Position numbers and translations under genes: made by a program
NCBI GenBank assembly: GCA_964252035.1
Contig: OZ176208.1
Origin: Podarcis erhardii
Lineage: Eukaryota
Length of the DNA: 64,000 nt
Reading direction: 5' to 3' (one strand)
In this document: in pieces, positions 47,751-55,464 of the stretch
How the letters are laid out: each line of letters begins with the position of its first letter
How positions within the stretch are numbered: the stretch's first letter is position 1
Notes under the pieces: model-generated
What the model saw: only the letters and a program-made list of their open reading frames with translations
Told to the model about the DNA's origin: nothing
Databases searched by the model: none

Positions 47751-47971
47751 CATCTAATCACAAATCTTTAATGTCTCTTATATTTGATGCTAACTTATCT
47801 TTTTAATAAATAAATTAATTAATTAACAAGCATCTGTACATTTGTTTTTTAGCTTATGGTTTTTTTTCAATCTTTTGAATTAGCCACTTTAAGTAATGTG
47901 ATAGTTTCTTAAATGCAAAGTTCAGTATATATTATAACCAGTCTGGCTTATGTGGTTTGTGGTCAGCTTAC

Positions 47972-48044
47972 CTTCCTCATCAGACACATCCAAGACTTCA
48001 GTCATAGTTTCAGGTACATTGAGCTTGTGTTTCTCAGTTACAGT
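47972..48044 (-). CDS. ANK2: ANK2 linker exon (73 nt, phase 0-1): [24 protein letters not shown]
   Basis: Strong polypyrimidine CAG acceptor, GTAAG donor; contained in ORF 47922..48224. Confidence 0.96.
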
Positions 48045-48111
48045 CTGGAAAAGAGAGAGAGAAAGAGACATCAATAAACAGGTTAAATAGTGGGGAAAAC
48101 AAACAAACACA

Positions 48112-48145
<34 letters not shown>

Positions 48146-48190
48146 GGTTTTGGTGTCCTCGGGTGTCTTCCCGTGTAAAAGTTGGGGTGT

Positions 48191-48236
48191 CTAGGCGACG
48201 TTTCGACGAGGTCTCACTCGTCATCTTCAGGCTGGT
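48191..48236 (-). ncRNA. Minimal type I hammerhead ribozyme motif in the PLE 3' region
   Basis: Minus strand CUGAAGA-U-GACGAG(UGAGAC)CUCGUC-GAAA-C-GUC: complete core, 6-bp stem II, palindromic ACGU in place of stem III; stem I has only 2 clear base pairs. Confidence 0.7.
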
Positions 48237-49677
48237 GCTTTCGGCTTCTTGTTACTGGAACAGAGCTGGATCTCAGTGTTTGAGTTCCTATAAATACTGT
48301 AGAGGGGGTGTGGTGTATAGCCTCCAATGTTCTGGGCAGAGAGGAAGTTCCCAGGCTAGTGTGCCTTTTCTTCTTTTGTTCCTTAATTACTTGAGAGATA
48401 TCTTGAGTGATTTCTTGAGTGATATCCTGAGTACCACTTAGGTGGGTCATTAGGTGTGGATTAGTTGTTAAAGTCTTTGTGTCTTGACCTCTTGAACTTT
48501 GTGAAGAGTTTTCCTGAGAAGATGGCTGTACTGTACTTTGTTGTGCTCTGGCTTGGCTTCGTGTATAGGGGCGAGCTGTGGTTTTGTGGCTTGTGTCAGC
48601 CAGGTCTGTGTAGGGATTGCAGGGGGGTGCAGCATCCGGAGGTGCCACCATGGATTGGCTACTGGATGGTGTCTGTAATTCATCTGTGGAGAGGGTCTGG
48701 GTTTGGGTCTGGTGTGGTTGATTGGTGTTGGCGTTCTGTGTGCCTCTGGATCTGGTGTCAGTTTTTGTGGGGAGGGCTAATTTCCAGATGTCTGGCAAGC
48801 GGGATGTGTCGTCACGCTTGTTCATGTTGTGAGGGTGTTTCTCTATCTCGATGGCTTCCATGATTATTCTCTTGTGGTGATGTTCCGTGTTAAAGAGCAA
48901 TTTGGAATCTGCAAAATTAATTTCGTGTCCTGTTTCTTTCATGTGTTGGAAAAGAGAGGAAGTTTTTTCTTCTTTTTTGACGGCATTCTTGTGTTCTGCG
49001 ATACGTGCATTTATTCGTCTGTTTGTTTGTCCAATGTACGTGGCTGGGCAGACTTTGCAGGGTATTTCATAGATCCCTTGGTTTTCCAACTGGATTTTAT
49101 CCTTGGGGTTTCTGAGGATATTGGCTATTTTTTGGTTGGTGCAAAAGGCTGTTTTGATATTGTGTTTATGGAGGATTTTGCTAATTTTATCTGTAGTGCC
49201 CTTGATATAAGGAAGGAGGGCCATGCCATTGTTTTCTTCTGTGTCTTGGTTTTTGGGGGGTGTTTCCTTTTGGATTAGCTTCGTAATCCTGTTTTGCTGG
49301 TATCCATTGGCAATTAACACATTTGAGAGATTCTGTAACTCAGTTGTCAAGTGGTCTTTGTCCGCCAGGCGTTTGGTTCTGGAGATGAGAGTCTTGGCTA
49401 CGGAGTTTATTTGTGCAGGGTGGTGGTGTGATTGTGCATGTAAGTAGCGGTTGGTGTGTGTTTTTTTCCGGTAGATAGTGTGTCCTAGGGAGCCATCAGG
49501 TTTTTTGTAGATTAGGACGTCAAGGAAGGGAAGTTGGTTGTTGGCTTCTATTTCCATAGTGAATTGTATTTTGGGGTGTAAGTTGTTGAGATGTGTGAGG
49601 AAGCTATCCAGTTTTTCCTTCCCGTGTGGCCAAATTACAAAGGTGTCGTCAACATATCTGAGCCAAAGTTTGGGTTT
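48214..49677 (-). CDS. PLE reverse transcriptase C-terminal half plus GIY-YIG endonuclease (partial, 488 codons, no natural start)
   Basis: ORF 48214..49557 extends 40 codons upstream without a stop ([19 protein letters not shown]...). Confidence 0.9.
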
Positions 49678-49749
49678 TCAAAAAAAGTTTTCAAACAAAG
49701 TTTGAGGACACCAAAACCTGCATTCCTGTACCCGTGAAAATCTACGAAA

Positions 49750-49786
<37 letters not shown>

Positions 49787-55365: not shown

Positions 55366-55464
55366 AGTTGTGGTGGTAATCACTTCCTCGGTTACAACCT
55401 TCAATGTATCAACCACTGAGATATATCCCAGACGCTTAGCAATTGCTAAAGCAGTGTTGCCATT
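55366..55464 (-). CDS. ANK2: ANK2 exon, last ankyrin repeat and start of linker (99 nt): [33 protein letters not shown]
   Basis: CAG acceptor, GTGAGT donor; contained in ORF 55246..55566. Confidence 0.96.

What the first reader, a model, noticed from the sequence alone, without database searches (positions are those of the whole stretch)
48191..48236. Hammerhead-ribozyme motif from a Penelope element sits in the sense strand of the ANK2 pre-mRNA, about 150 nt upstream of a splice acceptor
Seen: the minus strand reads C-CUGAAGA-U-GACGAG-UGAGAC-CUCGUC-GAAA-CGUC-G. This is the full hammerhead core with a perfect 6-bp stem II, an extra U between A9 and G10.1, and palindromic ACGU replacing stem III. 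The predicted cleavage site is after GUC (between 48197 and 48196), about 150 nt before the acceptor AG at 48046-48045. Established: Penelope-like elements carry minimal hammerheads that need dimerisation through the palindromic stem III (Cervera and de la Pena 2014). Inference: the element is co-oriented with ANK2, so every ANK2 pre-mRNA carries the motif, and cleavage in trans-dimers could cut the intron before exon 47972-48044 is spliced. Caveat: stem I has only 2 clear pairs, so this copy may be inactive.
Basis: partly seen in the sequence, partly recalled or inferred. Interest (0 to 1): 0.75.

Follow-up and report, generated by a model that had tools for sequence, protein, structure and literature searches.

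The report
Penelope retroelement hammerhead in ANK2 intron
The motif is a real, family-typical minimal hammerhead ribozyme carried by a young, 5'-truncated Penelope-like retrotransposon that landed in a (TA)n microsatellite inside an ANK2 intron; it is an ordinary passenger of a known kind, and nothing found here suggests that it cuts the ANK2 pre-mRNA.

Summary
The minus strand at 48195-48232 carries a complete hammerhead core: a 6-bp stem II, one extra U between A9 and G10.1, a palindromic ACGU in place of stem III, and a 2-bp stem I. The cut site lies 151 nt before the acceptor AG of an ANK2 exon.

It is not a chance match. It sits in a 5'-truncated Penelope/Poseidon-type element with an RT C-terminus and a GIY-YIG endonuclease. 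That element has the known insertion signature: (TA)n target, inverted 20-nt end and a 28-nt tail.

The same motif, letter for letter, is in three other copies, two in Podarcis muralis and one in a Logan contig. Copies in snakes, an agamid, a beetle and unplaced contigs differ by compensatory changes, including the known U3-A8 core variant. The extra U and the short stem I are therefore family traits, not decay. The A9-U-G10.1 triplet is the element's start codon, as published for the Anolis element PAc.

The proposed effect on ANK2 splicing is unsupported. There is only one copy in 64 kb, and the modelled hammerhead dimer is less stable than two monomers. Published minimal hammerheads are slow or need the element's protein. 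The acceptor is transcribed seconds after the motif.

The scan noted similar elements elsewhere in this genome.

The parts
48195..48232 (-). Minimal type-I hammerhead: stem I 2 bp (48232-48231 with 48196-48195), core C3-A9 48230-48224, extra U 48223, stem II 48222-48217 with 48210-48205, loop 48216-48211, G12-A14 48204-48202, palindromic ACGU 48201-48198, C17 48197. Predicted cut between 48197 and 48196.
   Evidence: Covariation among relatives. Own covariance model scores it 70.5 bits.
48222..48224 (-). AUG formed by A9, the extra U and G10.1. It is the start codon of the next unit of the element's ORF, so the hammerhead overlaps the start of the ORF.
   Evidence: ORF 47922..48224 begins here. 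All 9 aligned relatives keep AUG at this place. Gene calls in L010 start at it. [quoted passage not shown]
48141..49677 (-). Body of a 5'-truncated Penelope/Poseidon-type retroelement (1537 nt): RT C-terminus from the YVDD motif, GIY-YIG endonuclease, a long open C-terminal stretch, the hammerhead, and the first 84 nt after the AUG.
   Evidence: Translation. 92% identity to a Podarcis muralis RVT_1 + GIY-YIG protein. 97.7-99% DNA identity to copies in L001 and L002.
48214..49677 (-). Open reading frame of 487 codons with no internal stop. Its stop codon UGA (48216-48214) lies in loop II of the hammerhead.
48955..49077 (-). GIY-YIG endonuclease core (residues 201-241 of the 487-aa translation).
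   Evidence: Pfam PF01541, E 3.8e-4, 21.1 bits, just under the 22.6-bit cut-off. Relatives carry PF01541 and PF26215.
49704..49751 (+). Inverted 48-nt piece at the 5' junction: the element's last 20 nt (49704-49723, a perfect inverted repeat of 48141-48160) plus a 28-nt tail (49724-49751).
   Evidence: I16, 20 nt, 100%. The same tail follows the 3' end of the inverted copy in L001 (query 11-97 to L001 2355-2441).
49678..49703 (-). 26-nt filler between the inverted piece and the truncated body. It has no match in the other copies.
   Evidence: Alignments to L001 start at query position 124, which is window 49677. Sequence.
48115..48140 (.). (TA)n microsatellite at the 3' junction of the element (insertion target).
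   Evidence: The L001 copy ends in (TA)n at the same terminal bases.
49752..49782 (.). (TA)n microsatellite at the 5' junction of the element.
47972..48044 (-). ANK2 exon (73 nt) downstream of the motif. Acceptor AG at 48046-48045, donor GT at 47971-47970.
   Evidence: 23 of 24 residues identical to human ankyrin-2 in PDB 5y4f and 4rlv, E 2e-9.
55366..55464 (-). Upstream ANK2 exon (99 nt, last ANK repeat). Donor GT at 55365-55364. The intron holding the element is 55365-48045, 7321 nt.

Best explanation
The motif is the conserved minimal hammerhead that Penelope/Poseidon-type retroelements carry at the junction between one ORF unit and the next. A recently active lacertid family inserted a 5'-truncated, dead-on-arrival copy into a (TA)n microsatellite about 70 nt before the acceptor of a 7.3-kb ANK2 intron. 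By chance it went in the sense orientation. In the element's own life cycle the hammerhead is thought to process tandem, multi-unit transcripts. It is thought to act either as a double hammerhead formed by two copies or with help from the element's own protein. That part comes from the literature, not from this work. In the ANK2 pre-mRNA the motif is a lone passenger, transcribed with the intron and removed with the lariat. I infer that it has no measurable effect on splicing.
For: The motif and coordinates were read directly, and the match is unique and above chance. The host element has an RT C-terminus plus GIY-YIG. The best relative is a Podarcis muralis RVT_1 + GIY-YIG protein at 92% identity. 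The insertion signature matches published Penelope-like elements: (TA)n target, an inverted 5'-truncated piece and a 28-nt tail (PMC8557442; PMC11167929). The motif is identical in three other copies. In nine distinct relatives 85.9% of cells pair and 9 of 11 pairs show changes on both sides. None of 500 shuffles reached those values, and all slid controls were far lower. One relative has the published U3-A8 core covariant (PMC4209133). The family hallmarks listed in PMC4209133 are all present. The AUG lies at A9-U-G10.1, as in PAc (PAc start sequence). Only one copy is found in the window by descriptor and by covariance model. The ORF is open and copies are 97.7-99% identical, which points to a young insertion.
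Against: Absence of cleavage in vivo is therefore inferred, not shown. The copy is letter-perfect relative to its family, so it keeps whatever activity the family's hammerhead has. The family looks recently active, so its protein or transcripts could be present in some cells. An insertion this close to an acceptor, in sense orientation, in an essential gene is somewhat unusual. I could not test whether it is fixed or conserved at the orthologous site.
Confidence: 0.9

Rival explanations
1. One reading: the hammerhead in the ANK2 pre-mRNA pairs in trans with a second copy, either another pre-mRNA or a transcript of the element. It then cuts the intron 151 nt before the acceptor and lowers or modulates inclusion of exon 48044-47972.
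For: The core is intact and equal to the family form. It is in sense orientation in the intron. Stem I (GC/GC) and the ACGU palindrome are shared by the squamate copies examined, so hetero-dimers are formally possible. Intronic ribozymes can tune mRNA output, as CPEB3 does (PMC10919898).
Against: There is no second copy in 64 kb. The hammerhead-type dimer is modelled at -18.1 kcal/mol against -23.2 for two monomers. The ensemble dimer gain is about -5 kcal/mol, an estimated Kd near 0.2 mM, and it comes from a different pairing that sequesters C3-G5. Single minimal hammerheads showed no cleavage, and tandem constructs showed low cleavage at non-physiological Mg (PMC4209133). The PAc hammerhead needed the element's protein, and no RNA-seq reads began or ended at its cut site. 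A polymerase covers 151 nt in seconds, whereas CPEB3's effect relies on about 10 kb and a half-life of 2-3 min. Introns cut by slow hammerheads still splice.
Confidence: 0.04
2. The fragment has been co-opted in another way. The element's internal promoter, upstream of the hammerhead, starts a transcript whose AUG (48224) reads in frame through the (TA)n and the intron's 3' end into the ANK2 exon. That would give an N-terminally truncated ankyrin-B lacking the ANK repeats.
For: An ORF of 100 codons runs from 48224 through the retained intron end into the exon in the correct ANK2 frame. Promoters in the terminal repeats of such elements are reported (PMC6765202; PMC11167929).
Against: A correct frame with no stop over about 60 codons is expected by chance a few percent of the time. 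The frame depends on the length of a mutable (TA)14 run. It requires retention of the intron's 3' end. No promoter or transcript evidence could be obtained.
Confidence: 0.02
3. The motif is a chance resemblance in AC-rich repeat DNA, not a ribozyme-derived sequence.
For: Rfam hammerhead models give no hit even at E up to 10. Stem I has only 2 bp and stem III is absent.
Against: The full descriptor matched in 0 of 300 shuffles. The motif sits at the expected place in a retroelement with RT and GIY-YIG. It is conserved with compensatory changes from lizards to a beetle. Rfam also misses every relative that was scanned.
Confidence: 0.01

Closest known systems
Minimal hammerheads of metazoan Penelope-like elements (Cervera and de la Pena 2014, PMC4209133; dimer cleavage in Lunse, Weinberg and Breaker 2017, cited through PMC6765202)
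   Same: The core is the same. There is an unpaired nucleotide between 9 and 10.1, a G10.1-C11.1 pair and a long stem II (6 bp). Stem I is short, and the palindromic 15.2-16.2 has no loop 3. It sits near the 3' end of an RT + GIY-YIG element.
   Different: Nothing of kind differs. This is a lacertid family with its own stem II sequence and only 2 bp in stem I. D. virilis Penelope also has 2 bp; relatives here have 3-4 bp.
PAc, Poseidon of Anolis carolinensis (PMC11167929)
   Same: The hammerhead overlaps the ORF start, with AUG at A9-U-G10.1. Stem II is 6 bp and GAAACGUC is present. Targets are AT-rich or (TA)n. The copy ends 84 nt after the AUG, and 112 nt with the tail, close to PAc's RT start sites at 111-118.
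   Different: It is a different family. Stem II and the protein sequence differ. The cut site is 25 rather than 26 nt after the AUG, so the reading frame through the motif differs. PAc's hammerhead was shown to cleave with its protein; this one is untested.
[quoted passage not shown]
   Same: It is a self-cleaving-ribozyme motif on the sense strand of an intron of a neuronal gene.
   Different: Those are stable monomeric ribozymes, conserved at orthologous sites across mammals or amniotes. CPEB3's lies about 10 kb from the next exon. This one is a recent transposon copy with no stem III, 151 nt from the acceptor, and no conservation at the site has been shown.

Membership tests
Hammerhead ribozyme (catalytic motif) | Conserved core C3 U4 G5 A6 N7 G8 A9, G12 A13 A14, A15.1-U16.1, and a cleavage triplet ending in H17 | tested here: met
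   All positions are present at 48230-48197, and the triplet is GUC.
Hammerhead ribozyme (catalytic motif) | Three helices around the core in one molecule | tested here: not met
   Stem II has 6 bp and stem I only 2 bp. Stem III cannot form within one molecule because ACGU has no loop. It is a minimal variant that needs a partner or a helper.
Hammerhead ribozyme (catalytic motif) | Match to the Rfam hammerhead covariance models | tested here: not met
   No hammerhead family matched at gathering score or at E up to 10. The relatives scanned gave the same negative, so the models do not cover this variant.
Hammerhead ribozyme (catalytic motif) | Site-specific self-cleavage | not testable with these tools
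   This needs in vitro transcription or end-mapping.
Minimal hammerhead of Penelope-like elements | Lies in the terminal-repeat or ORF-junction region of an element encoding RT and a GIY-YIG endonuclease | tested here: met
   The motif lies at the end of the RT-EN ORF, 84 nt from the element's 3' end.
Minimal hammerhead of Penelope-like elements | Unpaired nucleotide between 9 and 10.1, G10.1-C11.1, stem II longer than canonical, short stem I, palindromic 15.2-16.2 | tested here: met
   One search compared with the list in PMC4209133.
Minimal hammerhead of Penelope-like elements | Conserved across copies with compensatory changes | tested here: met
   9 of 11 pairs change on both sides, 0 of 500 shuffles reach the observed values, and the U3-A8 covariant is seen.
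Minimal hammerhead of Penelope-like elements | Cleaves as a dimer or with the element's protein | not testable with these tools
   Only modelling was possible. The hammerhead-type dimer scores -18.1 against -23.2 kcal/mol for two monomers.
Penelope/Poseidon-type insertion | AT-rich or (TA)n target, adjacent inverted 5'-truncated copy, optional 30-40 nt tail | tested here: met
   (TA)n lies on both sides, with an inverted 20 nt plus a 28-nt tail, slightly under the published 30-40 (PMC8557442).
Host-functional intronic ribozyme (CPEB3 or HH9/HH10 type) | Conserved at the orthologous intron position across species | not tested
   No orthologous ANK2 introns could be fetched. The window's own ORF is not on record.
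Host-functional intronic ribozyme (CPEB3 or HH9/HH10 type) | Cleaved ends in vivo and an effect on the host mRNA | not testable with these tools

The most novel reading that the evidence does not exclude
The copy is letter-perfect and the family looks recently active. In cells that express the element's protein or many of its transcripts, the lone hammerhead in the ANK2 intron could then be cleaved with protein assistance, as shown in vitro for PAc. That would couple transposon activity to loss of ankyrin-B pre-mRNA, or let the element's machinery use ANK2 pre-mRNA as a template.
Probability: 0.03. Interest if true: 0.6.

Novelty: new member of a known kind. Interest (0 to 1): 0.15.

Why it matters
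Little rides on it as it stands. It is one more copy of a ribozyme class already catalogued in thousands of copies in fish, amphibian and reptile genomes. It is still a clean worked example. It shows the whole insertion signature of a Penelope-like element in a lacertid. It shows the hammerhead overlapping the element's start codon. It also shows that Rfam models do not detect this variant. If the motif were shown to cut ANK2 pre-mRNA in vivo, that would be a first case of a transposon-borne minimal hammerhead acting on a host gene. The published kinetics and the energetics modelled here argue against that.

Tried and rejected
Rfam at gathering score and at E up to 10 gave no hammerhead hit. 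I rejected this as evidence against the motif because the relatives' motifs are missed too.

I looked for a second copy in the window by exact pattern, relaxed descriptor, blastn, tblastn and my own covariance model. None was found.

A monomer fold of 160 nt keeps stem II but shows no stem I, and the z-score is -1.06, so the region is not unusually structured. I looked by eye for a longer or interrupted stem I in the flanks and found nothing convincing.

An exact look-up of the window's own ORF, meant to reach the same locus in another assembly, found nothing on record.

The Lunse et al. 2017 paper is not held, so it is cited only through a review.

Only the 55-nt motif region was aligned.

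Full report
**Observation.**
- Stem I has two pairs: G48232-C48195 and C48231-G48196.
- The core CUGAAGA runs C3 to A9 (48230-48224), followed by one extra U (48223).
- Stem II is a perfect 6 bp, GACGAG with CUCGUC (48222-48217 and 48210-48205), with the loop UGAGAC between.
- Then come GAAA (48204-48201) and CGUC (48200-48197).
- A15.1-C15.2-G16.2-U16.1 therefore form the palindrome ACGU with no loop, and C17 is 48197.

The predicted cut is between 48197 and 48196. The acceptor AG is at 48046-48045, 151 nt downstream. The exon is 48044-47972 and its donor GT is at 47971-47970.

The pattern occurs once in the window and never in 100 shuffles. A relaxed descriptor of my own found only this site. 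It hit 4 of 300 dinucleotide shuffles, and 0 of 300 once CGUH was required after GAAA.

**What carries the motif.**
The motif sits at the end of a 487-codon open frame on the minus strand (49677-48214).
- The frame starts in the RT motif YVDD and contains a GIY-YIG core. The Pfam hit is PF01541, E 3.8e-4, just under the cut-off.
- The closest database protein is from Podarcis muralis, 92% identical, and carries RVT_1 plus GIY-YIG.
- Further relatives are in snakes and an agamid (72-76%) and in many insects (about 50-60%).

The element body is 49677-48141. It is flanked on both sides by (TA)n (48115-48140 and 49752-49782).

At its 5' junction lies a 48-nt inverted piece. It comprises the element's last 20 nt (49704-49723, a perfect inverted repeat of 48141-48160) plus a 28-nt tail. 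In the Podarcis locus L001 the same tail directly follows the 3' end of a copy. Another L001 copy ends at the same terminal bases in a (TA)n run.

This combination is the published signature of Penelope-like insertions (PMC8557442; PMC11167929):
- a (TA)n or AT-rich target,
- an adjacent inverted 5'-truncated copy,
- an optional tail of about 30-40 nt.

Copies in L001 and L002 are 97.7-99% identical to this one, and the frame here is still open. The family is therefore young. No other copy of the element lies in the window.

**Is the motif a decayed or an intact family member?**
It is identical, letter for letter, in two Podarcis copies and in a Logan contig. Copies differ by compensatory changes in Ahaetulla, Phrynocephalus and Vipera, in a beetle (Anoplophora), and in three contigs of unknown source.

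I aligned nine distinct sequences (A1) and scored the hammerhead pairing on them:
- 85.9% of cells pair, against 69.6% in shuffles.
- 9 of 11 pairs show changes on both sides.
- No shuffle in 500 reached the observed values, and every slid control was far lower.
- The first two stem I pairs always pair and co-vary (GC, AU, UA).
- Pairs 3 and 4 of stem I form in the more distant relatives but mostly not in squamates.
- The beetle copy has U3 with A8, the core covariation reported by Cervera and de la Pena.

That paper lists the hallmarks of metazoan minimal hammerheads: a nucleotide between 9 and 10.1, G10.1-C11.1, a long stem II, a short stem I, and palindromic 15.2-16.2. This copy has all of them.

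All nine sequences read AUG at A9-U-G10.1, and gene calls in relatives start there. [quoted passage not shown] Here the distance is 25 nt.

The copy ends 84 nt after the AUG, or 112 nt with the tail. That is close to PAc's mapped reverse-transcription start sites at 111-118.

Rfam sees none of these motifs. A covariance model built from A1 finds them all, and finds only one in the window.

**Host gene.**
- The exon downstream matches human ankyrin-2 at 23 of 24 residues (PDB 5y4f and 4rlv, E about 2e-9). The match to ankyrin-1 is much weaker.
- ANK-repeat exons lie upstream on the same strand.
- A 2062-codon open frame at 12895-6707 fits the giant exon.
- The upstream exon is 55464-55366 with its donor at 55365-55364, so the intron is 7321 nt.
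- The element lies at the intron's 3' end. The (TA)n target is about 70 nt from the AG, upstream of the polypyrimidine tract and the likely branch sites.

The motif is indeed on the sense strand of the ANK2 pre-mRNA.

**How it most likely works.**
In the element's own transcripts the hammerhead is thought to process multi-unit RNAs. It would do so as a double hammerhead between two copies, or with help from the element's protein (PMC4209133, PMC6765202, PMC11167929). That is taken from the literature, not shown here.

In ANK2 I infer it is a passenger, for five reasons.
1. No partner lies within 64 kb.
2. In a double hammerhead of this type both stem III and stem I form between molecules. With 4 + 2 + 2 pairs the structure evaluates to -18.1 kcal/mol, against -23.2 for two separate monomers. 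The predicted best dimer instead uses a CAG-C-CUG self-pairing that buries C3-G5. The ensemble gain of about 5 kcal/mol implies a dissociation constant near 0.2 mM.
3. Published single minimal hammerheads showed no cleavage, and tandem constructs cleaved poorly. PAc's hammerhead cleaved only with its protein, and no RNA-seq reads start or end at its cut site.
4. The acceptor is only 151 nt away, so the polymerase reaches it within seconds. The CPEB3 ribozyme's effect depends on a half-life of 2-3 min matched to about 10 kb of downstream intron.
5. Introns cut by slow hammerheads are still spliced, and only fast ribozymes abort splicing (Dye 2006 and Fong 2009, as summarised).

**What I could not do.**
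I could not fetch orthologous ANK2 introns, so the age and fixation of the insertion are inferred only from copy identity and the open frame.

**Verdict.**
The copy is an intact member of a known ribozyme class. The proposed action on ANK2 splicing is unsupported and mechanistically unlikely, at about 4%. First-stage notes from the scan report similar Penelope elements with minimal hammerheads elsewhere in this genome, which fits a dispersed repeat family. This is a new member of a known kind, of low interest.

Noticed in passing
window 47922-48224 (-): [quoted passage not shown] It enters the ANK2 exon in the correct ANK2 frame (100 codons). This is probably chance, and the frame depends on the microsatellite length.
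   Followed up: partly
window 48214-48216 (-); L006 2447-2450; L010 2233-2241: The RT-EN frame here stays open about 190 codons past the endonuclease and stops at a UGA in hammerhead loop II. In relatives L006 and L010 the upstream ORF's stop codon is the UGA of the CUGA box, and the next ORF starts at the AUG three bases later. Stop, ribozyme core and start are packed into about 10 nt.
   Followed up: partly
window 49010-49015 (-): AATAAA in sense orientation inside the element's endonuclease region. It is a possible intronic polyadenylation signal in the ANK2 pre-mRNA.
   Followed up: no
proteins P0003 and P0056: Fragments of this retroelement family carry misleading names in public records: 'P2Y purinoceptor 1 isoform X3' in Ahaetulla prasina, and a partial 'Escherichia coli' hypothetical protein on a 2.6-kb contig, which is probably contamination.
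   Followed up: no
one search hit list; L007 (Anoplophora glabripennis): Squamate copies of this family are 50-60% identical in protein to many insect elements (beetles, bees, a cockroach). These share the same hammerhead with the AUG overlap, and the beetle copy has the U3-A8 core variant. Whether this reflects an old shared clade or horizontal transfer was not examined.
   Followed up: no
window 48225-48234 (-): The stretch CAG-C-CUG, which spans stem I's 5' strand and C3-G5, is self-complementary between two molecules. It gives the predicted best dimer (-29.4 kcal/mol), a pairing that would compete with the active fold.
   Followed up: partly
   Followed up: no
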